IMG/VR virus record: IMGVR_UViG_3300028416_000004 | Location: 168,515-232,514 of that record | Reading direction: 5' to 3' (one strand) | Length of the DNA: 64,000 bases | Part shown: positions 2,730 through 64,000 of the stretch, piece after piece | How the letters are laid out: each line of letters starts with the position of its first letter | Position numbering within the stretch: position 1 is the first letter of the stretch | Position numbers and translations under genes: made by a program | Notes under the pieces: generated by a model | Seen by the model: the letters and a program-made list of their open reading frames with translations, nothing else | The model's database searches: none | What the model was told of the DNA's origin: nothing

Positions 2730-4585
2730 GTTGTTCTTATTTTTAAATCTGCATCAGGATATCTAACTTCAAACATTGATAAAGGCGTTGAATATATAGT
2801 GTTATCAATTAAATTTATTAAAGTCTTTCTTATGTTATTAGAAGCACTAGAAGGTAATAGAGTTGTAGGTCCACTAGCTTGAGAAATTAAATTAGAAGAA
2901 TATAATCCTCCATCTAAATTGTAAACTCTTATTCCAGAAACATTTATTACACCTGGAACTTCTCTTAGGATATCTGTTAATTGAGAAATATAAACATGTT
3001 GTCCCATATCCCAATTGTCAATATTAAAATAATCTTTTAATTGTTGCAAACAAGTTACTTTAACTTCATTACTATTAAAACTTTTATCTGTAAGTAAATC
3101 TATTTCAAAAGATAAATTAACAACTTTTGCATCATTTATTTCTATAAAGTCATTGATAGCTCTATATTTAGAAAGATAGTTTACAAGATTATTTTTTAGT
3201 AAACTTAAAGAAGTTTCTGAAAGTTTTCCATTAGAATCTTTAGATAAAACATAAAGTTGAATTTTATTATCATTAACTCTTCCATTAATTCTAAAAGGAG
3301 CACCAAATTTGCCAGGTATCTGTTTTGCTCTTGCAATATAATCTTCAAGCGTTATACATCTTTCTTGAGCTGCAAAATTACTAGATGCAGCATATCTAAT
3401 TTCTTGAACATTAGGCAAACCTCGACCTCCTAATGCTGGAATAATATTAGTCCCTTTTGTTGAAGATAAGACAGAATCGTTAACTGTAGCATTAACTCCT
3501 TGTATTACAGCATTTATGTTTCCTATTTTATTTAAAACGTTTGTACCAACATTAGATTCTTCCCCGCCTCCTATTCTATATTTTATAAATAGAGTAGAGT
3601 CAGCAGGTAATTTTTCACCTAAAGAAGTATTATTTAATATTCTTTCATAACTAACTTGATTAGCACTATTTAATGCTAGACTATTTAAGTATTCAGCATA
3701 TGCATTAACATTTGGTGTACCACCTCCAAAAGTTAATTTACAAGAACCATCTGATAAAAATTCTTTTGTAAATCTTCTATTTACTTCAACCCATCTCCCA
3801 TAAGAAAAAGAACCAGTAGAAACCCCAGTATCTTCTAAGAAGATTTCATCTTCAGCTAAGTGGTCTACTTCGTAATATTTGTAATCAAAATTTTTATAAT
3901 CAGTATATGTTGGAGGAATGTTTATGTTAGTTCCTGGAAGAACTATAACATCTAAAATTTCTAAAATATTAGTTTGTGATAAAAACACCTCTAAAAATTC
4001 TGTTTCAGAATCTTCATCTGTGATAATTTTTTGTAAAGTTGTAGTTATACCAGCAACTGCAAATTCTCTTTTTGTGATATTATATCCTAATATATTTTGT
4101 GAAGCATCAAAAATTGGATTTATAATTCTATTAGTAACACCAGTTTCAGAAAAATCACTTGAAAAATCAACTTGATTAACAGTTTCAAAAGATTGGCCAT
4201 TCCCATCAAATCTAACTCCAGGTCTATAAATAGGCAAATATTGTTCGTCTGGTCCTGTAGAAATAGCTGGAACTCTAATAGTTATATCGACAAGAGTGGA
4301 GCTACCTCTAACTCCAGGTACTTTGTATCCTAAAGTTTTAGCTAATCTATAAGCTGAAGAAATTTCACTAACTCCATCTAAAAATAATTCATTAAATCTT
4401 TTATCTGTATAATAAGATAATAAATCAGAAACATAAGCAAGTAAGTCTACTAAAGCCATACCAGCACTTGTCACATTGAAATCTTGCCATTGTTTTGGAA
4501 AATAAACTTTTAAAACTTTTTCTATATCTTCTCTTATAGTGTTAAAATCTCTTTTAAGATAATCCTGCTTTTTTAATACTGGCAT
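2726..4585 (-). CDS. Baseplate wedge protein (T4 gp6 / baseplate J-like)
   Basis: Motifs RDFNTIREDI...WQDFNVTSAGMALVDLLAYVSDLLSYYTD, LAKTLGYK, YRIGGGEESNV and RCITLEDY are typical of gp6/J wedge proteins. Confidence 0.9.
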   Translation of the reverse strand: MPVLKKQDYLKRDFNTIREDIEKVLKVYFPKQWQDFNVTSAGMALVDLLAYVSDLLSYYTDKRFNELFLDGVSEISSAYRLAKTLGYKVPGVRGSSTLVDITIRVPAISTGPDEQYLPIYRPGVRFDGNGQSFETVNQVDFSSDFSETGVTNRIINPIFDASQNILGYNITKREFAVAGITTTLQKIITDEDSETEFLEVFLSQTNILEILDVIVLPGTNINIPPTYTDYKNFDYKYYEVDHLAEDEIFLEDTGVSTGSFSYGRWVEVNRRFTKEFLSDGSCKLTFGGGTPNVNAYAEYLNSLALNSANQVSYERILNNTSLGEKLPADSTLFIKYRIGGGEESNVGTNVLNKIGNINAVIQGVNATVNDSVLSSTKGTNIIPALGGRGLPNVQEIRYAASSNFAAQERCITLEDYIARAKQIPGKFGAPFRINGRVNDNKIQLYVLSKDSNGKLSETSLSLLKNNLVNYLSKYRAINDFIEINDAKVVNLSFEIDLLTDKSFNSNEVKVTCLQQLKDYFNIDNWDMGQHVYISQLTDILREVPGVINVSGIRVYNLDGGLYSSNLISQASGPTTLLPSSASNNIRKTLINLIDNTIYSTPLSMFEVRYPDADLKIRTT

Positions 4586-6575: not shown

Positions 6576-9539
6576 ATGGCAGATATTATAAAAAAAATAA
6601 AAACCAATAAAGATGTAAATGTAATAACTTACTTTACGACAGTTGATGCGAGTTCAAAAGAAATTTTTGAAAAACTCAAAAATATTTCCAGTTTACCAAC
6701 TATAAATAGACAACTTAGAATTTGGGATACTATACAACAACAAGGAAAAGAAGCTTATGCAATAAAAGGAGCAAATAATAAAGTTGTTGAATTGTTAGAA
6801 ATGGTAGATGGTTCTTATTGTAAAAGAATACCTTTAACTAATGAATTTAAATTTTTATCTGAAGATGAAGAAAAGAATGTAGTTAAAGGTAAAGTTTTTT
6901 ATGCAAAACAAGATTATGTAAGACCATTAAAGAATGAAACTGTTGAAGAATTTATAGAACAAGCAATAGCTTACTCTGGAAATTCAGCATATTCAAATGT
7001 TTTTAATACAATTCAAAAAAAAACAGATTACTATGCTGACATAACTTTAAAAAGGAGTATAGATACACTCGATACTTTAAATGTCAAAAATAATCTTTTA
7101 TCTGAAGTACCAACTCAAGAGTCAGACACTGGTGTTGTATGTGGAACTTTAGTAGCTAGACAAAAAGTTTTAGATGAAAATGGAGAAAGAGCTTTAATTC
7201 CTTTGGCAAATGTTCCAATAGTTATTTTTAATCCTTCAGAAGAATTTCCTACATATACTTCTCAGGATGAAAATGGCAATAGAATAACTTTGAATGTCAT
7301 ACAAAATTCAGAACCAGAAGATTATTCAGATTTAAACTCTTATGTTTTAGATGTAGGTGTAGATAAGGCAAGAGAAGCTTTAGGGAGTAATGATGTTGGA
7401 GAGGAGTTTGATGGATTGAAACCTTTGTTAAAATCTGTTGAAAGTTTAAATTTACCTGAACATTATAAATATTCAACTATTACAAATGAAAAAGGAGAAT
7501 TTGTAATTCATGATGTACCTACTGGAAATCAAGTTTTATTATTTGAAGTAGATTTATTAAAACAAGGGATGAATAAAAGTGAAGTCGCCTTAAATTTCTT
7601 CCCATACACTAATGAAGAATTACCTAACATAGATAATGTACCTCATTTTTATTATAGGCAAATTCCAATCTCTGTAGTTTCTTCTTGGGGCGAATTTCAA
7701 ACTGGATTTACTGAAGTGAATATAACTTCTAATTTAGATATGAGAAAATGGTCTACTTTTTATGTATCTCCCATTTCTGTTGAAGATAATAATTTAGAAG
7801 AACTTTTTGCTTTAGGTAATTTTAGTAGATTAAATATTTTAGCTAAAGATATGACTAAAGAAGGATATCCTTTAACTACAGAAATAGTAGAAGTGGATGA
7901 TATTTTTTCTAGAGTTGAAAATCAAAGATTAGAGTGGTTTAATGAAAATAAATTTACTAAGTCACAGATTAATTTTAGTAAAAATAATTTTCAAACTTTT
8001 AAACTACCTGCTAATCTTTATGACCCAAATGGAATATCATCTAAAGATGGTGGAAGAACTAAATTAAATTCTAAAAAAGGTGTTTGGTTATGTTCTTATC
8101 AAATGAAAATGTATTACGAAGGAAATCCAGATGTTTATCGAACAACTGGATTTTTAAGAGATAAATTAGAAGAAAATGCTGTTCATTCAAGTCATTTTGA
8201 TGCTAATAGAGGTGTAGACTCTAATCCTTCTTCTGCTACTGGCAACGGATACAATACTTCTATCAACACTTTTCCATATGAAAGAACTTGGACAATAAAT
8301 TACCCAGAACCTTATAAAATACCTTCACTACCTATAGAATATAATGAAAAAGACTTCAATAATCAAGTTGAGCCTAGATATTTAGATGGTGATTTAGCTG
8401 GGTTTTATTATGGTCAAGAAGAATCAACAGGGTATGGACTTATGACTCCCTTAGAAGGAGGTGATGCTATATATAATAAATTTTCACAGACGATTACTAA
8501 AAGTAGAATATATAAATATGAAACAGATGTTTCTTGGCATGAAGAATATTCAAATGGATTTAGAAAATCACAACACTCTAATCTTTTTCAAGGTAAACAT
8601 TTTACTGTAAAAAGTGGAGAAAAGTATCAAAGAATAGAATGTGGATTTGCTTATTGGTTAAAACCAGAAGGTTGGGGTAGAATTAATAATCAAGGTTGGG
8701 GTGATATTATGTTAAATTCAGATATTAATTCAAATTATTCATCTTCAGACAATAAACTTATACCTCAATCTTATATAGGTGCAAATTATAGACAGAGTGA
8801 AAATTTATTATTAAAAATGGATAGCTCAATTTCTCCTTCATGGTTAAGACAAGGTGCTATTGATTTTTATAGAATTGTAGATGATTCTCCTCAATTTTTA
8901 GAAGAAAAAATACCATCACCAATTAAAAAGTATGGCAAAGTTGTAATTGAAAATATCTACACCAATAGAGAAAAGGCTATCTCTAGGCTTGAATTACGAA
9001 TAAGTAATAAAAAAAACTATAGAATGAGAATTTCACAAAATTCTGTTATTGAAATAACAAATAATGGTGCCATAAAATCTGAAATAACAGTTAATGGTGA
9101 TAAGAGACAAGTTGAACCAAAAAAATCTATCTCTTTTAATGTTGCATCTTATACTGAAATTACATTTACTTCAAATTTAGATTATGATATTCAAAAAAAT
9201 TCTTATGATACTTGTAATTATACATTTAAGTTTAAAAATAGTGAAATTAAGAAAGTAGACACTATAATTTATGATTATTATAACTTTACCTTAACAGCTG
9301 GTGAACAAACTCAAATACCAACTAGATATTTAGTTACGACAGTATATAGTGCTGAAGGTAATGTAAAAATCAAGAAAAAAGGAGTTAAGAAGTGTAAAAA
9401 AACATTCAATCAAGCAGGCACATATCAGATTAATGGTTTGATTTTTGAAAAAACTAAATCTTCATCAGCATTAAGCTTCACTTCATCACGAGTAGGTCAT
9501 GATTGTGCTGATGGTGGTATTAAAATTTTGAGAGTTTAA
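6576..9539 (+). CDS. Large virion structural protein with prealbumin/carboxypeptidase-regulatory-like domain
   Basis: 987 aa; YSTITNEKGEFVIHDVPTGNQVLLFEVD beta-sandwich motif; lies in the structural operon. Confidence 0.55.
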   Translation: MADIIKKIKTNKDVNVITYFTTVDASSKEIFEKLKNISSLPTINRQLRIWDTIQQQGKEAYAIKGANNKVVELLEMVDGSYCKRIPLTNEFKFLSEDEEKNVVKGKVFYAKQDYVRPLKNETVEEFIEQAIAYSGNSAYSNVFNTIQKKTDYYADITLKRSIDTLDTLNVKNNLLSEVPTQESDTGVVCGTLVARQKVLDENGERALIPLANVPIVIFNPSEEFPTYTSQDENGNRITLNVIQNSEPEDYSDLNSYVLDVGVDKAREALGSNDVGEEFDGLKPLLKSVESLNLPEHYKYSTITNEKGEFVIHDVPTGNQVLLFEVDLLKQGMNKSEVALNFFPYTNEELPNIDNVPHFYYRQIPISVVSSWGEFQTGFTEVNITSNLDMRKWSTFYVSPISVEDNNLEELFALGNFSRLNILAKDMTKEGYPLTTEIVEVDDIFSRVENQRLEWFNENKFTKSQINFSKNNFQTFKLPANLYDPNGISSKDGGRTKLNSKKGVWLCSYQMKMYYEGNPDVYRTTGFLRDKLEENAVHSSHFDANRGVDSNPSSATGNGYNTSINTFPYERTWTINYPEPYKIPSLPIEYNEKDFNNQVEPRYLDGDLAGFYYGQEESTGYGLMTPLEGGDAIYNKFSQTITKSRIYKYETDVSWHEEYSNGFRKSQHSNLFQGKHFTVKSGEKYQRIECGFAYWLKPEGWGRINNQGWGDIMLNSDINSNYSSSDNKLIPQSYIGANYRQSENLLLKMDSSISPSWLRQGAIDFYRIVDDSPQFLEEKIPSPIKKYGKVVIENIYTNREKAISRLELRISNKKNYRMRISQNSVIEITNNGAIKSEITVNGDKRQVEPKKSISFNVASYTEITFTSNLDYDIQKNSYDTCNYTFKFKNSEIKKVDTIIYDYYNFTLTAGEQTQIPTRYLVTTVYSAEGNVKIKKKGVKKCKKTFNQAGTYQINGLIFEKTKSSSALSFTSSRVGHDCADGGIKILRV

Positions 9540-16061: not shown

Positions 16062-16907
16062 ATGAAAGATTTAATAAAACTTTATGAAAACTTTTGTTTT
16101 TTAAAGGAAATCCCTTTTAAATTAGATGATAGTGTTAATAGTTATGATGACACAACTCTTTTTTGTCCAGCTGGTATGCAACAATTTAAAGACAAATTTA
16201 AAAATCCTGATAACACCACAATAGCAAATATACAATCTTGTATTAGGTTAAATGATTTAGAAGAAATCGGTGATGGTACCCATATGTTACACTTTAGAAT
16301 GATTGGTTTGTTTTCTTTCGGTAAAATGACACTTAATGAGGCTGTTGATTTTTGGGTGGATTTTATTAAAGACTTCTTAGGTATAAAGATTGATTATGTT
16401 ACTATTCACCCAGATAAATTTGATACTTGGAAATGGTTATATGAACGTCATAAAATACCAATTAAATTAGATAGTGAATGTATTTGGTCAGATGGTGAAA
16501 TGGGTGGTTATTGCACCGAGTTTTATCATGATGATGTTGAAATTGGTAATATCGTAAATACAATGGATAAGTTTATTGATGTTGGTTTTGGATTCTCTAG
16601 AATTAATGATATTATTAATGGTAAGAACGAATTAACAAAAAATGATATATTGAGTGATGCTATCAATAAGATTATTGAAGCTGGTTTTAAACCTGGTCCA
16701 CAAAAACAAGGATACGTGCTTAGGAGACTTTTAAGGCAACTTTATAAGGGTGGTGGTAGTATTGAACATCCATTCTTCACAAAAGAGGTTGAGAGACAAG
16801 AAAAGGCTAAAGTAAGATATGAAAGGCTTAAAATTAAACATCGTGACAAACCAAAAGAATGGTGGTTTGATACACATGGAATTGATTTAGATGAAATGGA
16901 GGATTAA
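16062..16907 (+). CDS. Truncated alanyl-tRNA synthetase-like protein (catalytic core only)
   Basis: TLFCPAGMQQFK, QSCIR.NDLEEIG, FRMIGLFSFG, EIGNIV, IDVGFGFSRI and GYVLRRLLR match the AlaRS N-terminal domain; only 281 aa, with no editing or C-Ala domain. Confidence 0.85.
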   Translation: MKDLIKLYENFCFLKEIPFKLDDSVNSYDDTTLFCPAGMQQFKDKFKNPDNTTIANIQSCIRLNDLEEIGDGTHMLHFRMIGLFSFGKMTLNEAVDFWVDFIKDFLGIKIDYVTIHPDKFDTWKWLYERHKIPIKLDSECIWSDGEMGGYCTEFYHDDVEIGNIVNTMDKFIDVGFGFSRINDIINGKNELTKNDILSDAINKIIEAGFKPGPQKQGYVLRRLLRQLYKGGGSIEHPFFTKEVERQEKAKVRYERLKIKHRDKPKEWWFDTHGIDLDEMED

Positions 16908-27012: not shown

Positions 27013-27591
27013 TTATAGTTTTATTAACACATCATGAGTAATTAATCGAATTAATTTTGTTGTTTCAGGGTTATTTTTATGTGTTTTTCTTATAGAAGAA
27101 TAAAACCCCATTCCAGACCAAGCATATTCAACCAATATTCCGTTTGGTTTTAACTCATCAACAATTTTTTGATACATACCCATCAATTCATTTTCATTCT
27201 TAAATGGTGTGTAACAATAAACAATATCATATTTACCATAATTATGATTCATAATATCATCAACATACAAATCGATATTATTATCCCAATAACCTTTTAG
27301 GTTTTTATTAAAAAAATCAACATACTCTTTATACTTCTCAACACCAAAAAAATTAAAAGTTTTGTCCTCAAATTTTTTGGATTCAATATAAAAGTTATAC
27401 ATCATTGTACCCAAACCAAATCCAGCATCACATACGTTAAATGTTGTTTTTGATGGTGTTAAATTTATCATTCTGGGAAAAATATTTTCGAATTGGGTTG
27501 TTGTTGGTTCGATATAATACCACTCATTGGTGTTATCAACAAAATCATTATTGTTTAATTCTTGTGATTTTATTTTATATTCTTTTTTCAT
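27013..27591 (-). CDS. Class I SAM-dependent methyltransferase
   Basis: VCDAGFGLG (motif I), FFGVEK, YVDDI and YDIVYCY. Start placed at Met 27591 because the listed ATG at 27627 lies inside a terminator hairpin. Confidence 0.75.
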   Translation of the reverse strand: MKKEYKIKSQELNNNDFVDNTNEWYYIEPTTTQFENIFPRMINLTPSKTTFNVCDAGFGLGTMMYNFYIESKKFEDKTFNFFGVEKYKEYVDFFNKNLKGYWDNNIDLYVDDIMNHNYGKYDIVYCYTPFKNENELMGMYQKIVDELKPNGILVEYAWSGMGFYSSIRKTHKNNPETTKLIRLITHDVLIKL

Positions 27592-27604
27592 AAGTGTTAA
27601 AAAT

Positions 27605-27640
27605 AAAAAGAGGGAGGAGTATTTCATCCTCCCCTTTTTT
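27605..27640 (-). terminator. Intrinsic terminator after the long fibre gene
   Basis: GGGAGGA (27612-18) pairs with TCCTCCC (27627-33), flanked by A- and T-runs. Confidence 0.8.
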
Positions 27641-27694
27641 GTTTATGTATTAAATTAATAATACATTGGTTTTAGTTTAATCTAGGGTTGTAGA

Positions 27695-30445
27695 TTATGC
27701 TAATGGAGTAAAGTTACCATAATAATCAGGGTTTACAGCAATTGCTTCTTGTCCGTAAATCACAACTGATGCTCCAGTTTCAGGTGCTACATTGAACGTG
27801 AAGGTACCTTGAGTGTTACCTTTAGCATCTACTACTGAACTGAAAGTATAATCAACATCTCTTTCTTGTAATAAACCATTTAAGTAGATTGCTCCACTTC
27901 CATTAATTAATACACTGAAATCTACAGTTACACCATCTCCGACTGCACTATTTAAAATCACAAACTTCCCGACATTAACAGCGTTTAAAATCATAGATTT
28001 GATTTCAACTAATGCTCCGTTAACACCATCTTTGATAGCTTGGTCGATTGAGTTTTGAACTGAAATCTCAGCAGATAACACAACTTCTAATGAAGCGTCA
28101 GCAGCAAGTCTTGCAGCTTTCTCTACAGAGTCAGCAGCTTCGAATGCAGCTGTTACAGCAGCGTCACCAGCAATTCTTGCGTTTTGTTCAGCTAAGTCAG
28201 CAGATTCTCTAGCAGCAACTTCAGTTGAGATATCAGCGTTTACTTTAGCTTCTAATGAAGCGTCAGCAGCTTCTCTAGCAGCAACTTCAGTTGAGATATC
28301 AGCGTTTACTTTACCTTCTAGTGAAGCGTCAGCAGATTCTCTAGCAGCAACTTCAGTTGATAAAGCAGCGTCATTACTCAATACGTAAGAAGCAAATGCT
28401 TGGTCGTTTTCAGTATCAACAGAGTTGATTAGTGTTACGATTTCAGCAAATGAATCTTTATCAGCATCAGAAGCCTCTAAGATAGCATCAATTCTACTTT
28501 TTTCAGTAGATACTTTAGCCTCTAATGAAGCGTCTCCTGAAACTCTCGCTGATTCTTCAGCAGATACGTCAGCATCGATTTTAGCTTCTAATGAACCATC
28601 AGCAGCAACTCTTGAACTAGCTTCAGAACTGATTGCAGCTTCTCTAGCAGCAACTTCAGTAGAGTATTCAATAGCGTGAGTTGATTCCTCAGTAGACAAT
28701 CTTAATTCTAATGAAGCATCAGCAGCAGCTCTAATACTAGCTTCAGCAGATACGTCACCTGTTACAGTAGCATCAAAGTTATCTAAAATTCCTTTAGTAA
28801 TGAATGATAAAGCATCATATCCAGCTAAACTATCTGGTTGAACACCAGCTTTGTTTAAACCTTCGAATGTTCTTTCTCCAGCTGTACCTTCAGCAATAAC
28901 ATCTTTCATTCTAATGTTGTTATCACCATCAACTTCGATTGTTACATCATCAGTTAAAGGTAATGCATCGATTTCAGCTTCCAATGAAGTATCACTAGCT
29001 AAACGAGTTGATTCTTCAGCATCTAATTCACTAACAACTTCTGCGAATGAATCGATTGAGTTTAAGTCAGTGTTAGCGATGATTGAAGAAACCTCACTTG
29101 ATAATACTGTAGCGATTGAATCTTCAGCTTCAGTAGCTCTTGAAATCTCAGCAGCTAATGCAACATCTAATGAACCATCAGCAGCAATTCTTGCAGCTTC
29201 TTCACTAGCTATAGATTCATTTAAATCCTTAGACTCAAGTTCGATTTTTTCATTTAATGAAGCATCAGCAGATACTCTTGAACTTACTTCAGATTCGATA
29301 GCTGTATCATGCTGAGCATCTTTAGCTGTAGCTCTAGCTATCTCAGCGTTTAATTCATTTTGAAGGTCAGTATCTGTATTTATCGCTCTAGTTATTTCGT
29401 CATCGATTTTAGCTTCTAATGAACCATCAGTAGCAATTCTTGCAGATTCTTCAGCTGACATGTCAGCATCGATTTTAGCTTCTAATGAACCATCAGCAGC
29501 AATTCTTGCAGATTCTTCAGCTGACATGTCAGCATCGATTTTAGCTTCTAATGAAGCGTCAGCAGCTTCTCTAGTAGCTTTCTCTACAGAGTCAGCAGCT
29601 TCGAATGCAGCCGTTACAGCAGCATCACCAGCAATTCTTGCGTTTTGTTCAGCTAAGTCAGCAGATTCTCTAGCAGAAACCTCAGTTGAGATATCAGCGT
29701 TTACTTTACCTTCTAATGAAGCGTCACCTGAAATTCTTGAAGATACTTCAGTTGATAAAGCAGCATCATTAGATAATACATAAGATGCAAATGCTTGGTC
29801 ATTTTCAGTATCAACAGAGTTGATTAATGTTACGATTTCAGCGAATGAATCTTTATCAGCATCAGAAGCCTCTAAAATAGCATCAATTCTACTTTTTTCA
29901 GTAGATACTTTAGCCTCTAATGAAGCGTCTCCTGAAACTCTCGCTGATTCTTCAGCAGATACGTCAGCATCGATTTTAGCCTCTAATGAAGCGTCTCCTG
30001 AAACTCTCGCTGATTCTTCAGCAGATACGTCAGCATCGATTTTAACTTCTAATGAACCTTCAGCATCTTTAGCTCTAGTAGTTTCATCACTGATTGATGT
30101 CTCTAATGAACCTTCAGCATCTTTAGCTCTAGCAACTTCAGCATCGATAGCTGCATCATGTTCAGCATCTTTTGCTTCAGCTCTAGCAACTTCAGCAGCG
30201 ATTTCAGCATCATGTTCAGCATCTTTTGCTTCAGCTCTACTCTTCTCGTTGGTAATTGCTTGTTCTAAATTTTGTAAGTCGTCAACTAACCCAGGTAAAT
30301 CTGATTTCTCAATACCAATTGGTCTTAAAATTTCAGCATCAGTCAATTTACCGTCTGATTGTTTATTTAAGATAATCCTAGTTCCACCTGTAAAATTGTT
30401 TGTTGGCTCTACTGGTGCTTCTAATAAAAATAATCTATTTTCCAT
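27695..30445 (-). CDS. Long repetitive coiled-coil tail fibre/whisker-like protein
   Basis: 916 aa Ala/Glu/Ser-rich 18/21/22-aa repeats (EESAR.AAD.SLEAKID), DSFAEIV motifs, and a C-terminal IYLNGLLQ..DY..F..AP..G domain also seen twice in 31808..32521. Confidence 0.7.
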   Translation of the reverse strand: MENRLFLLEAPVEPTNNFTGGTRIILNKQSDGKLTDAEILRPIGIEKSDLPGLVDDLQNLEQAITNEKSRAEAKDAEHDAEIAAEVARAEAKDAEHDAAIDAEVARAKDAEGSLETSISDETTRAKDAEGSLEVKIDADVSAEESARVSGDASLEAKIDADVSAEESARVSGDASLEAKVSTEKSRIDAILEASDADKDSFAEIVTLINSVDTENDQAFASYVLSNDAALSTEVSSRISGDASLEGKVNADISTEVSARESADLAEQNARIAGDAAVTAAFEAADSVEKATREAADASLEAKIDADMSAEESARIAADGSLEAKIDADMSAEESARIATDGSLEAKIDDEITRAINTDTDLQNELNAEIARATAKDAQHDTAIESEVSSRVSADASLNEKIELESKDLNESIASEEAARIAADGSLDVALAAEISRATEAEDSIATVLSSEVSSIIANTDLNSIDSFAEVVSELDAEESTRLASDTSLEAEIDALPLTDDVTIEVDGDNNIRMKDVIAEGTAGERTFEGLNKAGVQPDSLAGYDALSFITKGILDNFDATVTGDVSAEASIRAAADASLELRLSTEESTHAIEYSTEVAAREAAISSEASSRVAADGSLEAKIDADVSAEESARVSGDASLEAKVSTEKSRIDAILEASDADKDSFAEIVTLINSVDTENDQAFASYVLSNDAALSTEVAARESADASLEGKVNADISTEVAAREAADASLEAKVNADISTEVAARESADLAEQNARIAGDAAVTAAFEAADSVEKAARLAADASLEVVLSAEISVQNSIDQAIKDGVNGALVEIKSMILNAVNVGKFVILNSAVGDGVTVDFSVLINGSGAIYLNGLLQERDVDYTFSSVVDAKGNTQGTFTFNVAPETGASVVIYGQEAIAVNPDYYGNFTPLA
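28110..29995. repeat. Nested intragenic repeats (63/66-nt units; ~450-bp block duplicated at 1395/1461-nt offset)
   Basis: 28411 aligns to 29806 (offset 1395) and 28116 to 29577 (offset 1461); 63-nt tandem units at ~29403-29540 and ~29900-30050. Confidence 0.85.
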
Positions 30446-30726
30446 TTGTTTTTTTAATTATTATGTTTTATTCTACACTCTTTCGTGTCGTTTTTGGCAT
30501 ATACATAATTAATTTAAATATAAAATAGGATTATAAATATAAATGATTAAAAACTATTAAAATATTTTTATACAAAAAAATATTTATTAAAAGTTTTTTT
30601 TAATATAAATGTGAAATAAATCTTCAAATTTTGTTTGAGAGATTTCTTGATATAATATATAAATTTAAATATTTGAGCCTTGGAAGCTCATTGCAATTAA
30701 TAAATATAAAGAAAAAAAAATAAAAA

Positions 30727-60122: not shown

Positions 60123-60142
60123 AAAAACAAAAATTATAAAAC

Positions 60143-60178
60143 AAAAAAAAACGCTCACTTAAATGGGCGTTTTTTTTT
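60143..60178. terminator. Bidirectional intrinsic terminator
   Basis: A-run, ACGCTCA-N6-TGGGCGT, T-run between convergent genes. Confidence 0.8.
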
Positions 60179-60193
60179 GTTTTATATAGATAA

Positions 60194-60622: not shown

Positions 60623-62521
60623 ATGACTTCAAATACAATTATTATTACAAAACTCAAAACAAATTATAAAATAGAATATAATTTTAGAAAAAATTTGAGT
60701 GACTTCATAAAAAGTTTTCCAGAAGACCAAAGGAAAATACAAGTAGAATATATACAAAATTCAGACGGTAGTACGTATGAAAATTGGTATAGAATAGTTT
60801 CTTCTGGATATATAGGTAAAGTTGTATCTTTTATAAAAGATAATGGTTTTCCATTTAAGTTTACTAATTTAACAAATGAAGAAGTTGAAGAATTAAGAAA
60901 AGAGTTTGAAAAGAGACAAGAATCTTTACTTAAAGCTTTATCTATGAAAACTGAAAATATAGATACTTCTCATATTGATTTTTCTTTTATGAATATAGAG
61001 CCATATGAATACCAAAAGAAAGCTGCTGTTTTTTTTGACACTTGTAATGGAAAAGCCTTACTTGGAGACCAACCAGGGGTAGGAAAAACTGCCTCTGCTA
61101 TGACTTACGCTGCTTGGAAAAAAAAGAAGACTCTAATAGTTTGTCCAGCAAACTTAAGACTTAATTGGAGGAGTGAAATACTTAAGTTTACTAAAGAGAA
61201 GGCGTTTGTTTATAAGTGGAAACCAACAAAAAAGTCAAAGAAAATAAATCACTCAAAAGATGAATCTATGTTCCACATAATAAGTTATAGTTCATTAGAC
61301 ACTTATATAACTATAGAGATGTCTCACAAATGTAAAAATGTATTTTGTGGCTGGAGTGAAAGAAATAGTAAAAAAAGATACAAAGATAAAGTTTGTCCAA
61401 GTTGTGGTGTTAGGAATATGGTAAATTCAAGAGCTACAAAAAATATATCCTTCACCCCAGACAAAGAAGGTCATCAATTGAATCCAAAAGATTATGAAAT
61501 ATTAATAATGGATGAAGCTCACTACATTAAAAACGACTCTGCAGATAGAACTAAATTAGCAAAGAAAACTTTAAAAGAAATACCTCAAAGATTATTATTG
61601 ACAGGCACAGCAATAAAAAGTAGACCATATGAATTTTATTCTTTGTTGAATTTTTTATATCCAGAAGAATGGAGTAATGCTCATTCATTTGGAATGAGGT
61701 ATTGTGCTGCAGAAAAGAATAATTTTGGATGGGATTATTCAGGTGCTTCTAATTTGGATGAATTATTTGAAAAGATTTCACCTTTCTTCTTGAGAAGATT
61801 AAAAAAAGATATATTAAAACATTTACCCCCAAAAACATATACAGTAATACCTATAGAGCTTAGTTCTTCTGAAATGTCTGAATATAACAAAATAAAAAAA
61901 GGAATTAAAGAAGAAATGAGTCAAGATGATAAAAATGCAGACAATAGAATGAATCACTTGACTAGGATTCAAAAGTTAAAAATGTTTACATCTGAAATAA
62001 AAATGAAAAAAGCTTTTGAGTTTATTCAAGATATCATAGATGGAGATGAAAAAGTTGTAGTATTTACTCAATATAAAAGTATTTCATATGAGGTAGTAAG
62101 CAAATTTGGAGACAAAGCAGTTGTTTTTAATGGAGATATAAATGCTAACAAAAAAGAAGAAGCAGTAGAAGCTTTTATGGATGATAAAAATATAAAGGTT
62201 TTTTCTGGTACAATTGGAGCGGCAGGTGTAGGAATAACTTTAACCTCTGCTAGTATTTCAATTTTTATAGACCAACCTTGGACTAGTGCTGATAGAGAAC
62301 AAGCAGAAGATAGAATACATAGAGCTTCTTCAAAAGCGGATAAAATACAAATAATTAGATTGGTCTGTCAAGATACTATAGATGAAGATATCGAAAAGTT
62401 GTTAAATCAAAAATCTTCAATTTTATCTAAAGTGTTAGATGGAAAAGAATTTGAGGAAACAGTAGAAGTTAAAGATGGTAGTATTTTTAATGATTTAGTA
62501 AGTTTGTTATATAATTCTTAA
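60623..62521 (+). CDS. SNF2/SWI2-family (SF2) helicase/annealing ATPase with Zn-finger insert
   Basis: LGDQPGVGKT, DEAH, LLTGT, LRRLKKDI, AAGVGITL and QAEDRIHR motifs; C.{4}C...C..C insert. Confidence 0.9.
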   Translation: MTSNTIIITKLKTNYKIEYNFRKNLSDFIKSFPEDQRKIQVEYIQNSDGSTYENWYRIVSSGYIGKVVSFIKDNGFPFKFTNLTNEEVEELRKEFEKRQESLLKALSMKTENIDTSHIDFSFMNIEPYEYQKKAAVFFDTCNGKALLGDQPGVGKTASAMTYAAWKKKKTLIVCPANLRLNWRSEILKFTKEKAFVYKWKPTKKSKKINHSKDESMFHIISYSSLDTYITIEMSHKCKNVFCGWSERNSKKRYKDKVCPSCGVRNMVNSRATKNISFTPDKEGHQLNPKDYEILIMDEAHYIKNDSADRTKLAKKTLKEIPQRLLLTGTAIKSRPYEFYSLLNFLYPEEWSNAHSFGMRYCAAEKNNFGWDYSGASNLDELFEKISPFFLRRLKKDILKHLPPKTYTVIPIELSSSEMSEYNKIKKGIKEEMSQDDKNADNRMNHLTRIQKLKMFTSEIKMKKAFEFIQDIIDGDEKVVVFTQYKSISYEVVSKFGDKAVVFNGDINANKKEEAVEAFMDDKNIKVFSGTIGAAGVGITLTSASISIFIDQPWTSADREQAEDRIHRASSKADKIQIIRLVCQDTIDEDIEKLLNQKSSILSKVLDGKEFEETVEVKDGSIFNDLVSLLYNS

Positions 62522-62550
62522 AAAAAATAAAAAAAAAAAATAAAAAAATA

Positions 62551-62581
62551 TTTGTTTTTTTGTAATGAACAATTAAATTTG
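62551..62581 (+). promoter_or_regulatory. Bacteroidota primary-sigma promoter driving the tRNA cluster
   Basis: TTTG (62551-54)-N19-TAAATTTG (62574-81), a full consensus match. Confidence 0.75.
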
Positions 62582-62627
62582 TCGTTATATAATAAAAAGC
62601 TCTTTGAAATAATGGAGATAATTAAAA

Positions 62628-62702
62628 GCTCCCATCGTCTATCGGTTAGGACATCAGGTTTTCATCCTGAAAAGCGGGGTTCGATTCCCCGTGGGAGTAC
62701 CA
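62628..62702 (+). tRNA. tRNA-Glu (TTC), CCA encoded
   Basis: Acceptor GCTCCCA/TGGGAGT; anticodon arm TCAGG-TTTTCAT-CCTGA; T-arm GCGGG-TTCGATT-CCCGT-like; ends ACCA. Confidence 0.92.
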
Positions 62703-62749
62703 CTTGTTTTTAATTTCATTATCACAAATAAGTGAAATATATAATATAT

Positions 62750-62821
62750 TGCGTGAAAGTGTAAAAGGTTGCATGGGACGCTCATAACATCTACGGGGTG
62801 GTTCGAATCCACAACACGCTA
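62750..62821 (+). tRNA. Degenerate tRNA with CAT anticodon (Met-like; possibly a pseudo-tRNA)
   Basis: Cloverleaf with CTCATAA loop and GGTTCGAATCC T-arm, but mismatches at 1:72, 7:66, 30:40 and 49:65, A at position 8, and no CCA. Confidence 0.55.
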
Positions 62822-62870
62822 CAAAGATTTAGAGTAATTAACTAAATCTTGTCTAGTTCGAAATAGACGA

Positions 62871-62944
62871 TTGAATATAGTGTAAGAGGCACGGAAAAAG
62901 GTAATACGGACTCAAGATTAAGGTTCGATTCATTATTATTCAAC
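62871..62944 (+). ncRNA. tRNA-like element lacking a foldable anticodon arm
   Basis: TTGAATA/TATTCAA acceptor-like stem, TA-GTGT..GCAC D-arm, GGTTCGATTC T-loop; the 25-nt middle has no stem. Confidence 0.45.
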
Positions 62945-63160
62945 TAGTGAGTAAGAGGTGCTCATAGAGTTTGTAGGTAACTCCACAACAAAACCTTCCC
63001 CCAAAGTCTCATGTAGGGTTATGAGTGAGGTATGTGGAATCAGGGCGGAAAGTCCTCCTACCCCCACATTAAGGACTGACGTTTTCAGTGGGTAAGACCA
63101 ACAGGTTTTAGAAAAAGGAAAAAACCGATATATCTAGCATATGTAATCTCAATATGTGAC
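62945..63160 (+). ncRNA. Unassigned structured RNA candidate A
   Basis: GC-richer intergenic stretch with several stems and a loop-bulge pairing GTAGG/CCTAC (see findings). Confidence 0.5.
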
Positions 63161-63164
63161 ATTT

Positions 63165-63238
63165 GCACCCATAGCTCAGCTGAATAGAGCAATTCACTTC
63201 TAATGAATAGGTCCCAGGTTTGAATCCTGGTGGGTGTA
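63165..63238 (+). tRNA. tRNA-Arg (TCT)
   Basis: GCACCCA/TGGGTGT acceptor; ATTCA-CTTCTAA-TGAAT anticodon arm; CCAGG-TTTGAAT-CCTGG T-arm. Confidence 0.9.
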
Positions 63239-63424
63239 CTAAAAAAAGTGATAAGTTCCAAACAAATAATTAGCTCTACCAGGGCACAAATCCGTGTGAG
63301 GTTATCTAATGTGAGGAATTTCTTTTAATATCACACCTATACATAGGTCGAAAAGATATATAAAAAATGGATTTATTTAATACTAGTCAAAATAAATTGT
63401 TTATATTAAAAGATAGCTTTTTAA

Positions 63425-63498
63425 GGTCCTTTAACTCAGTTGGTTAGAGTAACTGACTCATAATCAGTAGGTCGATGGTTCGAGTCCATCAAGGACCA
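63425..63498 (+). tRNA. tRNA with CAT anticodon, most likely Ile2 (lysidine-modified)
   Basis: GGTCCTT/AAGGACC acceptor with C4-G69 and C5-G68 (TilS determinants in E. coli); ACTGA-CTCATAA-TCAGT arm. Confidence 0.85.
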
Positions 63499-63512
63499 CA
63501 TATTAAACTAGT

Positions 63513-63785
63513 CTCCAGAAACTTCTTTTATGTAAAGCCTAAGTTGCTAAGGTAAGAATGATAGCAGTTTCTCACAATCGATTAAGCACTACATGACAAT
63601 TGTGAGGATGTAGTAATAAACTTGCATAATAAGAAGTTTCAAATGGAGTATTTCACATTGTCGGTTTGGTGGATGTGATACACGACCCTTAGACGTAAGG
63701 GCTACTCTTAATAATAAGTTGTAATCGCCCAGGGTAACGGGGACAACCAATATAGAGAAAAGCAGTTAAAATCTGTAGGCCGACA
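63513..63785 (+). ncRNA. Unassigned structured RNA candidate B (pseudoknotted domain plus multibranch domain)
   Basis: Long-range stems 63513-35/63622-48 and 63659-68/63776-85; H-type pseudoknot at 63571-63614. Confidence 0.65.
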
Positions 63786-63799
63786 CATTATTTATAAAC

Positions 63800-63873
63800 T
63801 CCTCCTTAGTTCAGTTGGTTAGAACATTTGACTGTTAATCAAAGGGTCCTTGGTTCGAGTCCAAGAGGGGGAG
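63800..63873 (+). tRNA. tRNA-Asn (GTT)
   Basis: TCCTCCT/AGGGGGA acceptor with G73; TTTGA-CTGTTAA-TCAAA arm; CTTGG-TTCGAGT-CCAAG T-arm. Confidence 0.92.
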
Positions 63874-64000
63874 CTTTTTTTTTTTAAAAAAATGTTAAAT
63901 ATATTTATTCTTTTTTTTACGATTATTTCTTTTAATAAACTTTATACCTCTAGAATATTTTTCTCTATGCCTAATCATAGCGTTTTTCATTCTTAAATCT

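What the first reader, a model, noticed from the sequence alone, without database searches (positions are those of the whole stretch)
63513..63648. Structured RNA candidate B, 5' domain: 23-bp closing helix around a three-way junction and a clean H-type pseudoknot
Seen: CTCCA 63513-17 / TGGAG 63644-48; GAAACTTCTT 63518-27 / AAGAAGTTTC 63631-40 (10 perfect bp); TTATGTAA 63528-35 / TTGCATAA 63622-29; hairpin TGCTA 63545-49 / TAGCA 63562-66; GTTT 63567-70 / AAAC 63618-21. The pseudoknot has stem 1 CTCACAAT 63571-78 / ATTGTGAG 63599-606 (8 bp) and stem 2 ACTACAT 63588-94 / ATGTAGT 63608-14 (7 bp) with a 1-nt junction. This much perfect complementarity is unlikely by chance. I cannot match it to tmRNA, RNase P, SRP, 6S, a riboswitch or a small ribozyme. 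Inference: a possibly undescribed phage ncRNA co-transcribed with the tRNAs.
Basis: partly seen in the sequence, partly recalled or inferred. Interest (0 to 1): 0.8.

Follow-up and report, generated by a model that had tools for sequence, protein, structure and literature searches.

The report
New pseudoknotted RNA in phage tRNA operon
A 136-base stretch between two tRNA genes of an uncultured marine jumbo phage is a genuine, previously undescribed folded RNA whose helices, pseudoknot included, are preserved by matching mutations in a diverged relative, though its function is still unknown.

Summary
The fold is unusually stable (z = -4.2; top 0.5% of windows in this genome). The interleaved stems alone would not be convincing in this AT-rich genome. 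The decisive evidence is a diverged copy in a related phage contig (L046). There the domain sits after a different tRNA, all loops are identical, and 8 of 9 interior substitutions form four compensated pair swaps, one in each pseudoknot stem. No Rfam family matches, GOLLD, ROOL and HDV-like ribozymes included. The domain lies inside a four-tRNA operon, and a metatranscriptome contig spans that operon at higher depth than the neighbouring gene. It is one of several independently shuffled structured modules between the tRNAs; the "3' domain" is a separate module. It is accessory: sister phages lack it, and one strain has a TnpB insertion element in its hairpin loop. Most likely it is a compact stable small RNA cut out of the tRNA precursor that displays conserved UAAG loops to an unknown partner. 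The structure is shown; processing and function are inferred. The pseudoknot cannot be a classical coaxial H-type. The family is known only from one phage lineage.

The parts
62566..62593 (+). Sigma-70-like promoter candidate (TGAACA-16-TATAAT) 35 nt upstream of the first tRNA of the operon
   Evidence: Consensus scan, 10/12 match. Weak evidence: such sites are not enriched over shuffles.
62628..63499 (+). Upstream part of the operon: tRNA-Glu 62628-62702, spacer 1 (462 nt, with a non-canonical tRNA-like CAU element at 62750-62821), tRNA-Arg 63165-63239, spacer 2 (185 nt), tRNA-Met 63425-63499
   Evidence: ARAGORN and Rfam. Spacer 2 keeps 14 of 44 predicted pairs through double changes in 4 lineages. 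Spacer 1's 3' part is conserved in L046.
63505..63512 (+). Conserved lead-in AAACUAGU directly 5' of the domain
   Evidence: Present before the domain in the window, L043 and L047. L046 has it as AAACUAUAGU, although the upstream element differs (tRNA-Met, ORF cassette, tRNA-like, tRNA-Arg).
63513..63535 (+). 5' strand of closing helix P1 (P1a 63513-17, P1b 63518-27, P1c 63528-35)
   Evidence: Pairs with 63622-63648. P1a and P1b are kept in L046 with double changes (U-A to C-G twice). The P1c sequence is replaced but still pairable (this part of the alignment is fitted to the model).
63536..63544 (+). Junction strand AGCCUAAGU (first UAAG). GCCU 63537-40 may pair with AGGU 63550-53
   Evidence: Eight of 9 nt are identical in L046. 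The possible 4-bp junction-loop helix stays paired through L043's A38G and U41C changes. Suggestive only.
63545..63566 (+). Hairpin P2: stem 63545-49/63562-66, 12-nt loop AGGUAAGAAUGA (second UAAG)
   Evidence: Two adjacent pairs are swapped in L046 (C-G to U-A, U-A to C-G) and the loop sequence is identical. In L047 a TnpB element is inserted in this loop at about 63551-53.
63567..63578 (+). 5' strand of P3: GUUU 63567-70 (pairs with AAAC 63618-21) continuous with pseudoknot stem 1, CUCACAAU 63571-78
   Evidence: Stem 1 pairs with 63599-606. The apical pair U-A becomes A-U in L046. GUUU/AAAC is invariant, so untested.
63579..63598 (+). 20-nt loop of stem 1: CGAUUAAGC (third UAAG), pseudoknot stem 2 5' strand ACUACAU 63588-94, then GACA
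   Evidence: The loop sequence is identical in L046 except the covarying C63589 (C to G).
63599..63621 (+). Stem 1 3' strand 63599-606, G 63607, stem 2 3' strand AUGUAGU 63608-14, AAU, AAAC 63618-21
   Evidence: G63613 becomes C in L046, compensating C63589 to G. The duplex is -5.9 kcal/mol in each lineage and -2.3 for the mixed pair. Stem 2 was not in the model that made the alignment.
63622..63648 (+). 3' strand of closing helix P1 (63622-29, bulged U 63630, 63631-40, bulge AAA 63641-43, 63644-48)
63660..63784 (+).
   Evidence: MFE. In L046 its 5' half follows tRNA-Ser instead, with compensated changes in the closing helix and two inner helices.
63800..63885 (+). tRNA-Asn 63800-63874 followed by a T11 run 63875-85 (probable end of the transcription unit)
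   Evidence: No canonical hairpin terminator was found by the scan. The RNA contig of run X5 ends at 63865.

Best explanation
The 136-nt stretch, with its 8-nt lead-in, is a self-contained structured non-coding RNA module of an uncultured marine jumbo phage. It is transcribed as part of a tRNA operon. Shown: it folds into a long bulged closing helix that carries a three-way junction, one hairpin, and a 12-bp arm whose apical loop pairs with an 11-nt bulge at its base (the pseudoknot). Evolution keeps these pairs while leaving the single-stranded loops unchanged. Inferred: the tRNA-processing nucleases that free the flanking tRNAs (RNase P at the next tRNA's 5' end, and 3'-trailer endonucleases after the upstream tRNA), possibly with RNase III acting on the long stalk, release it as a stable small RNA protected by its terminal helix. 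It then acts in trans by presenting its invariant loops, three of which contain UAAG, to a protein or RNA partner. It is an accessory, exchangeable cassette, one of several such modules interleaved with the tRNAs, not a core phage function.
For: Structure: all pairings are present; z = -4.2; top 0.5% of windows. Covariation with L046: 96.4% of cells paired, and 11 double-changed pairs against 3.7 +/- 1.5 (0/500 shuffles) and 0-3 for slid controls. In the unambiguously aligned 86-nt interior, 8 of 9 substitutions form 4 compensated swaps; 0 of 2,000,000 random placements reach 4, and only 0.4% break no pair. Stem 2 covaries although it was not in the aligning model, and mixed strands lose 3.6 kcal/mol. 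Loops are identical between lineages whose stems and flanks differ, which argues for tertiary contacts or a binding partner. Transcription context: the domain lies on the tRNA strand between tRNA-Met and tRNA-Asn. One contig of metatranscriptome X5 covers 62630-63865 at word depth 46, against 12.5 falling to 0 over the adjacent helicase gene, and X18 and X17 show the same direction. There is no conserved ORF. Modularity: the same domain follows tRNA-Arg in L046 and an ORF cassette in L043. Spacer 2 and the 3' domain also covary. Precedent: T4 RNAC and RNAD are RNAs of still unknown function; by my own knowledge they are encoded in the T4 tRNA cluster. GOLLD and ROOL lie near phage tRNA islands.
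Against: Only three distinct full-length sequences exist, and effectively two lineages, so each helix rests on 1-2 events. P1c covariation comes from a model-fitted alignment. Nearly all pairs are Watson-Crick, so the reverse strand folds equally well; the strand is assigned from context. Contig word depth is a poor expression measure and DNA carry-over cannot be excluded (tool caveats). No RNA ends were observed, so release from the precursor is pure inference. Sister phages with 77-87% identical helicases lack the domain, and one strain carries it split by an insertion element, so it is dispensable. No partner protein was identified among the window ORFs tested.
Confidence: 0.55

Rival explanations
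1. It is a cis-acting processing or stability element of the tRNA operon. The long stalk would be an RNase III-type processing site or a block to 3' exonucleases that ensures correct release and yield of the neighbouring tRNAs. The RNA would have no function once excised.
For: It starts 13-15 nt after a tRNA 3' end in the window and in L046, with a conserved lead-in. The closing helix is about 23 bp with bulges. All spacers of the operon are structured. By my own knowledge, RNase III contributes to T4 tRNA-precursor processing.
Against: A stalk or exonuclease block does not require invariant loops, a three-way junction or a covarying pseudoknot. In L043 the domain is about 285 nt from the nearest tRNA-like gene, behind a T-run and a small ORF. 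Sister phages place tRNA-Arg and tRNA-Met 5-7 nt apart with no such element.
Confidence: 0.2
2. It is a new class of self-cleaving ribozyme that trims the 3' trailer of the upstream tRNA, functionally like the HDV-like theta ribozymes of gut phages.
For: It is a compact pseudoknotted fold with invariant unpaired nucleotides, placed just downstream of tRNAs in a phage array. Theta ribozymes set the precedent for ribozymes at phage tRNA 3' ends.
Against: No self-cleaving ribozyme family matches at E<=10. The strand order is not the HDV nested double pseudoknot. The domain starts 13-15 nt from the tRNA end, not within +/-5 nt. The X5 RNA contig runs straight through the tRNA-Met/domain boundary, though contigs cannot exclude cleavage.
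Confidence: 0.07
3. It is a DNA-level selfish element: a MITE-like or IS200/IS605-derived palindromic element, or simply a preferred insertion hairpin. The inverted repeats would serve transposition, not RNA function.
For: It has 23-bp terminal inverted repeats around a 136-bp unit. Pairing is strand-symmetric. It is present or absent, and in different positions, among close relatives. The region is a hotspot of mobile elements: TnpB in L047, a group I intron in L012, an intein in the helicase, and an HNH gene nearby.
Against: There is no second copy in the 64-kb window. No other element in IMG/VR shares the termini: the 13 extra matches to the arm pattern lack the interior, lack tRNAs and give no model hit. 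Internal covariation preserves a pseudoknot and a three-way junction, which DNA transposon ends do not need. The termini differ between lineages while the interior loops are invariant, the opposite of a transposon.
Confidence: 0.05
4. It is chance complementarity in an AT-rich spacer.
For: Interleaved perfect stems of similar size are common in this genome. About 10 other loci fold as well after GC correction.
Against: There are four compensated swaps and no broken pair in the interior. Shuffle and slide controls agree. Loops are invariant across lineages.
Confidence: 0.01

Closest known systems
Phage T4 RNAC and RNAD (stable 'species 1/2' RNAs of the T4 tRNA gene cluster)
   Same: They are small structured RNAs of unknown function made by a phage and associated with its tRNA genes. 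They are still functionally unassigned. Their location in the tRNA cluster and their processing from tRNA precursors are from my own knowledge.
   Different: There is no sequence similarity to any GenBank phage. The host and phage lineage differ. The pseudoknotted three-way-junction architecture is not known for RNAC or RNAD. Processing is not shown here.
GOLLD and ROOL large ornate RNAs
   Same: They are phage or prophage RNAs often next to tRNA islands, with multiple pseudoknots and no known protein partner. One marine GOLLD lies downstream of a tRNA-Met, and tRNAs can be embedded in GOLLD's linker.
   Different: There is no match to either Rfam model at E<=10. This domain is 136 nt (the whole spacer is 300 nt), against roughly 580 to more than 800 nt. 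The modules here change order between strains, so they are not one fixed large RNA.
HDV-like theta ribozymes of gut phages
   Same: They sit immediately 3' of phage tRNAs in arrays, have a pseudoknotted compact fold, and have a proposed role in tRNA 3' maturation.
   Different: The cleavage site of theta ribozymes lies within +/-5 nt of the tRNA end (77% within 1 nt). This domain starts 13-15 nt away, has a different strand topology, and has no Rfam HDV-family hit.
Bulge-loop or H-type RNA pseudoknots in general
   Same: There are two interleaved helices, and both are supported by a compensated change.
   Different: The connector between stem 1 and stem 2 on the 3' side is 1 nt. That cannot cross an 8-bp stem in a coaxial H-type arrangement, which needs about 21 A. 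Stem 2 must instead lie beside stem 1, joining its apical loop to the bulge at its base.

Membership tests
Any Rfam 15 family (including tmRNA, RNase P, SRP, 6S, riboswitches, small ribozymes, Y RNA) | Covariance-model match at or near the gathering score | tested here: not met
   Only the four tRNAs pass the gathering threshold. At E<=10 over 62500-64000 nothing overlaps 63513-63648 except a 9/12 promoter-like string and noise. ARAGORN finds no tmRNA.
GOLLD / ROOL | Match to the family model | tested here: not met
   No hit at E<=10.
GOLLD / ROOL | Large size (ROOL about 580 nt, from my own knowledge; GOLLD often more than 800 nt) as one contiguous ornate RNA | tested here: not met
   The domain is 136 nt. 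The modules are separable and re-ordered in L046. GOLLD size.
GOLLD / ROOL | Phage-encoded, near tRNA islands | tested here: met
GOLLD / ROOL | Homo-oligomeric nanocage assembly | not testable with these tools
   Needs cryo-EM or native gels.
HDV-like theta ribozyme | Cleavage site (5' end of the ribozyme) within +/-5 nt of the tRNA 3' end | tested here: not met
   13-15 nt separate the tRNA end and the first paired base. Criterion.
HDV-like theta ribozyme | HDV-type nested double pseudoknot (strand order P1, P2, P3, P3', P1', P4, P4', P2') | tested here: not met
   The observed order is closing helix, hairpin, P3/stem 1, stem 2, stem 1', stem 2', P3', closing helix'. The HDV topology is from my own knowledge. 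No HDV-family Rfam hit.
HDV-like theta ribozyme | Self-scission in vitro | not testable with these tools
   Bench assay needed.
T4 RNAC/RNAD-type tRNA-cluster stable RNA | Encoded within a phage tRNA gene cluster on the tRNA strand | tested here: met
T4 RNAC/RNAD-type tRNA-cluster stable RNA | Sequence homology to T4 RNAC or RNAD | tested here: not met
   blastn of 63500-63799 against 50,697 phage records at E<=10 gives only 30-40-nt noise, none in T4-like RNAs.
T4 RNAC/RNAD-type tRNA-cluster stable RNA | Accumulates as a discrete processed species | tested here: inconclusive
   It is present in RNA-library contigs at higher depth than the flanking gene, but contigs give no ends.
MITE / IS200-IS605-derived palindromic element | Multiple copies sharing terminal inverted repeats | tested here: not met
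   There is a single copy in the window. The arm pattern with a free interior finds only chance matches in IMG/VR.
Group I intron | Match to the Intron_gpI model, inserted in a host gene | tested here: not met
   No hit in the window. A true group I intron does split tRNA-Met in relative L012 and shares no sequence with this domain.
Classical H-type pseudoknot | Two interleaved helices, both evolutionarily maintained | tested here: met
   There is one compensated double change in each stem and 100% of cells are paired.
Classical H-type pseudoknot | Loop lengths compatible with coaxial stacking of the two stems | tested here: not met
   The 1-nt connector would need to span 20.7 A in an A-form model.

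The most novel reading that the evidence does not exclude
The domain would be one of a set of exchangeable RNA cassettes that marine jumbo phages insert between the tRNAs of their tRNA operons. It would have an active role of a kind not yet described for phage tRNA arrays. One option is an RNA decoy or inhibitor aimed at a host tRNA-targeting defence nuclease or another host RNA-binding protein. Another is a new self-cleaving or otherwise catalytic fold. The rapid gain, loss and re-ordering of modules between strains would then reflect an arms race fought with structured RNAs, not with proteins.
Probability: 0.12. Interest if true: 0.85.

Novelty: new variant of a known kind. Interest (0 to 1): 0.55.

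Why it matters
Phage tRNA clusters are usually read as codon-usage or anti-defence tRNA supplies, and the DNA between the tRNAs is ignored. Here almost 1 kb of inter-tRNA sequence consists of several structure-constrained RNA modules that are shuffled, lost and invaded by mobile elements between very close strains. This domain is the best supported of them. It has a three-way junction, a covarying bulge-loop pseudoknot and invariant loops. It adds a compact, tractable example to the small set of enigmatic phage tRNA-island RNAs (T4 RNAC/D, GOLLD, ROOL), none of which has a known function. At 136 nt it is small enough for probing, crystallography or cryo-EM scaffolding, and pull-downs. Its natural variants (L046, L043, and the TnpB-split L047) already supply a mutate-and-rescue series. 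Two things limit the importance: the family is known from a single uncultured phage lineage, and no function is shown.

Tried and rejected
(1) Known families: Rfam at gathering threshold and at E<=10 gave nothing but tRNAs.
(2) GenBank phages: blastn of the array and of the spacer alone gave only tRNA hits or noise.
(3) MITE idea: no second copy. The arm pattern with a free interior gave 13 IMG/VR loci, all chance.
(5) Exact or degenerate seeds from five different parts of the spacer in IMG/VR returned only the same four near-identical contigs plus one chance hit (L040).
(6) Metagenome scan gave one identical contig.
(7) Reference genomes: two seeds gave two chance hits.
(8) Helicase-anchored IMG/VR relatives at 46-87% identity: no copy by blastn or by either covariance model. 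The same held for P0004 and P0002 contigs.
(9) MAFFT alignment of window against L046 slipped in the 5' arm and was replaced by the model-guided alignment.
(10) Group I intron relationship: the L012 intron is unrelated in sequence. The 358-nt replacement in L043 is not an intron but a tRNA-like gene plus a small ORF.
(11) Search for an encoded partner (RT, Ro, ligase, nuclease) among 26 window ORFs found none. Not all ORFs were tested.
(12) Coding potential: only short unconserved ORFs.

Full report
**What is there.** The window is the end of a 232-240-kb, 27% G+C contig of an uncultured seawater phage. Its SNF2 helicase is at most 31% identical to any GenBank phage protein. Downstream of that helicase (60623-62521) lies a + strand tRNA operon:
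- tRNA-Glu 62628-62702
- a 462-nt spacer
- tRNA-Arg 63165-63239
- a 185-nt spacer
- tRNA-Met 63425-63499
- a 300-nt spacer
- tRNA-Asn 63800-63874, followed by a run of eleven T.

The finding is the first 136 nt of the third spacer.

**Checking the observation.** The domain's minimum free energy is -35.9 kcal/mol, against -22.9 +/- 3.1 for dinucleotide shuffles (z = -4.2, 0 of 200 as stable). After GC correction it ranks about 38th of 7,514 equal-sized windows over both strands of the 64 kb.

First, perfect interleaved stems (S1 >= 7, S2 >= 6) occur 48 times in the window's two strands, and 10 are at least as long in total as this 8+7 example. So the pseudoknot alone is not beyond chance in an AT-rich genome. 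Second, almost all pairs are Watson-Crick, so the reverse complement folds equally well (-37.9). The pairing alone would fit a DNA inverted repeat as well as an RNA.

**Searching for relatives.** No Rfam 15 family matches, even at E <= 10, and GenBank phages share only the tRNAs. IMG/VR holds the element only in four near-identical contigs.

Helicase-anchored relatives at 77-87% identity have tRNA arrays at the same place but no trace of the domain, by BLAST or covariance model. In several of them tRNA-Arg and tRNA-Met are only 5-7 nt apart. That raised a MITE-like rival. However, there is no second copy in the window. The terminal arms with a free interior match only chance loci in IMG/VR. 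Further seeds and the metagenome and reference-genome scans added nothing.

The breakthrough came from the protein collection. The helicase's own 90%-identity cluster has eight other variants. Their contigs include strains whose arrays differ.

**The decisive comparison.** Contig L046 carries a diverged copy at 6765-6901 (100 bits, E about 6e-23 with the single-sequence model; 141 bits with the improved model). It sits 15 nt after tRNA-Arg, not 13-14 nt after tRNA-Met, and is followed by unrelated sequence and then tRNA-Glu.

The single-stranded segments are identical to the window: GCCUAAGUUG, AGGUAAGAAUGA, CGAUUAAGCA, GACA and UAAUAAAC. The helices differ by paired substitutions:

| Helix | Window | L046 |
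|---|---|---|
| Hairpin | UGCUA/UAGCA | UGUCA/UGACA |
| Stem 1, apical pair | U-A | A-U |
| Pseudoknot stem 2 | ACUACAU/AUGUAGU | AGUACAU/AUGUACU |
| P1b | one U-A pair | C-G |

P1a is re-made as CCCC/GGGG, and P1c is replaced by other complementary bases.

On the model-guided alignment, 96.4% of pair cells are standard pairs. Eleven pairs change on both sides, against 3.7 +/- 1.5 in column shuffles (0 of 500) and 0-3 when partners are slid by 1-3 columns.

The outer helix alignment is fitted to the model, so I also restricted the test to the 86-nt interior, which is anchored by identical flanks. There, 9 substitutions occur and 8 of them form four compensated swaps. None of 2,000,000 random placements of 9 substitutions gave four or more, and only 0.4% left all pairs intact.

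Stem 2 was not part of the model that produced the alignment, so its C-G to G-C swap is not an alignment artefact. The stem 2 duplex is worth -5.9 kcal/mol in each lineage but only -2.3 if strands are mixed.

The fold is therefore real and under selection, pseudoknot included. The GUUU/AAAC helix never varies, so it remains untested.

(i) With one nucleotide (G63607) between stem 1's 3' strand and stem 2's 3' strand, a classical coaxial H-type knot is impossible. In an A-form model that nucleotide would have to span about 21 A. Topologically, stem 2 joins the apical loop of the 12-bp arm (GUUU plus stem 1) to an 11-nt bulge at its base, so it must pack beside stem 1.

(ii) A further four-base helix is possible between the junction strand (GCCU 63537-40) and the hairpin loop (AGGU 63550-53). 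This one would have classical H-type geometry. The only two substitutions in strain L043 (A38G, U41C; the first is also seen in RNA runs X11 and X17) both keep it paired. That is suggestive, not proof.

(iii) The '3' domain' (63660-63784) is a separate module. In L046 its conserved half follows tRNA-Ser at the end of the operon, again with compensated changes. Spacer 2 keeps 14 of 44 predicted pairs through double changes across four lineages. The 3' part of spacer 1 is strongly conserved. The operon is thus a string of tRNAs interleaved with several independent structured RNA modules, and their order differs between strains.

**Is it RNA?** The domain is on the tRNA strand, with a promoter-like site upstream of the first tRNA and a T-run after the last. 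Six RNA-seq runs from seawater hold the locus. In metatranscriptome X5 a single contig covers 62630-63865, essentially first tRNA to last, at word depth 46. The adjacent helicase gene falls from 12.5 to 0. X18 (11 against 0), X17 (7.8 against 3.1) and X11 (5.8 against 3.9) point the same way. Contig depth is a crude measure and DNA carry-over cannot be excluded, so this is supportive only. No ends were obtained. No ORF is conserved across the domain.

**How it most likely works.** Shown: a compact fold maintained by selection, with invariant loops, inside a tRNA transcription unit.

Inferred: release from the precursor by the enzymes that free the tRNAs, protection by the long terminal helix, and action in trans through the invariant single-stranded loops. 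Three loops carry UAAG (63540-43, 63553-56, 63583-86). Loop invariance between lineages whose stems and flanks have diverged is the main argument against a mere processing stalk or exonuclease block.

The domain is accessory:
- Sister phages lack it.
- It changes position between strains.
- In L043 a T-run and a 56-codon ORF separate it from the nearest tRNA-like gene.
- In L047 a roughly 1.4-kb element encoding a 410-aa TnpB (OrfB_IS605/Cas12f-like) is inserted in the hairpin loop at about 63551-53.

No RNA-binding partner was recognised among the window ORFs I scanned.

**Comparison with known systems.** By context it belongs with phage tRNA-island RNAs of unknown function. These are T4 RNAC and RNAD (cluster location from my own knowledge) and GOLLD and ROOL. 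It is not a member of those families: no model or sequence match, a much smaller size, and re-ordered modules.

It is not a theta/HDV-like ribozyme. The spacing to the tRNA end is wrong (13-15 nt against within +/-5 nt) and so is the strand topology.

It is not a group I intron, although a real one splits tRNA-Met in relative L012.

**Verdict.** It is a new RNA family of a known general kind, documented so far in one uncultured phage lineage and effectively two sequence lineages. Its function is unknown. Interest is moderate.

Noticed in passing
L012:10081-10390 (IMGVR_UViG_3300020185_004330): The tRNA-Met(CAU) gene of a relative (87% helicase identity) is split in its anticodon loop (...CTCAT | intron | AATCAG...) by a group I intron (Rfam Intron_gpI, 80.8 bits). 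This resembles the cyanobacterial tRNA-fMet introns. ARAGORN misses the tRNA.
   Followed up: partly
L047:7803-9185 (ENA ERZ27267786 k141_488440); corresponds to window about 63551-63553: A roughly 1.4-kb IS200/IS605-type element encoding only a 410-aa TnpB (HTH_OrfB_IS605, OrfB_IS605, Cas12f1-like_TNB) is inserted in the hairpin loop of the domain. Its right end abuts GGUAAGAAUGA, so its guide RNA would be expected to match the intact domain.
   Followed up: partly
window 60623-62521; proteins P0001, P0122, P0124, P0125, P0128: In several strains the otherwise >=90% identical SNF2 helicase is 983-984 aa instead of 632 aa, because of an intein-like insertion (Hom_end / LAGLIDADG_3 domains). 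Together with the intron, the TnpB and a nearby HNH gene, this makes the locus a hotspot for selfish elements.
   Followed up: no
window 62750-62821; L046:7103-7180: This is a non-canonical tRNA-like element with a CUCAUAA anticodon loop and a GGUUCGAAUCC T-arm (20 bits in Rfam, missed by ARAGORN). The L046 copy has a perfect anticodon stem where the window has an A-C mismatch. It may be a fifth, unusual tRNA(CAU) or a decaying one.
   Followed up: partly
L043:4186-4262 and L047:7671-7747: In these strains the canonical tRNA-Met is replaced by a 77-nt tRNA-like sequence (32 bits) with a CAU anticodon loop, a poor D-arm and a long variable region. In L043 it is followed by a T-run and a 56-aa ORF (4327-4497) that looks HTH-like by eye.
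   Followed up: no
window 63240-63424 (spacer 2) and 62935-63164 (3' part of spacer 1); 63660-63784: The other inter-tRNA spacers are also conserved structured modules. Spacer 2 has homologues in L015, L046 and L047, with 14 of 44 predicted pairs compensated. Spacer 1's 3' part is 79% identical in L046, with long invariant stretches. The 3' domain follows tRNA-Ser in L046. None matches Rfam.
   Followed up: partly
window 27500-30500: G+C rises to 0.39 against a 0.27 background, and several of the most stable GC-corrected folds of the window lie here on both strands (27507-27592, 29411-29904), inside or next to a 916-aa ORF (27695-30445, minus strand). No Rfam hit.
   Followed up: no
window 60135-60186: A 26-nt-arm hairpin (92% complementary, A/T runs on both sides) lies between convergent ORFs. 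It is the most stable GC-corrected fold in the window and is probably a bidirectional terminator.
   Followed up: no
window 16062-16907 (+): A 281-aa ORF matches only the N-terminal 100 or so residues of class II alanyl-tRNA synthetase (tRNA-synt_2c, 75 bits). The same phage carries a tRNA-Ala about 2.7 kb beyond the window's end (L003:261-335).
   Followed up: no
window 62630 (run X5) and 63244 (run X17), loose ends: RNA-library contigs of other strains join tRNA-Glu to the 3' end of a different upstream tRNA, and tRNA-Arg to an unrelated hairpin plus T-run. These are further array variants in the population.
   Followed up: no
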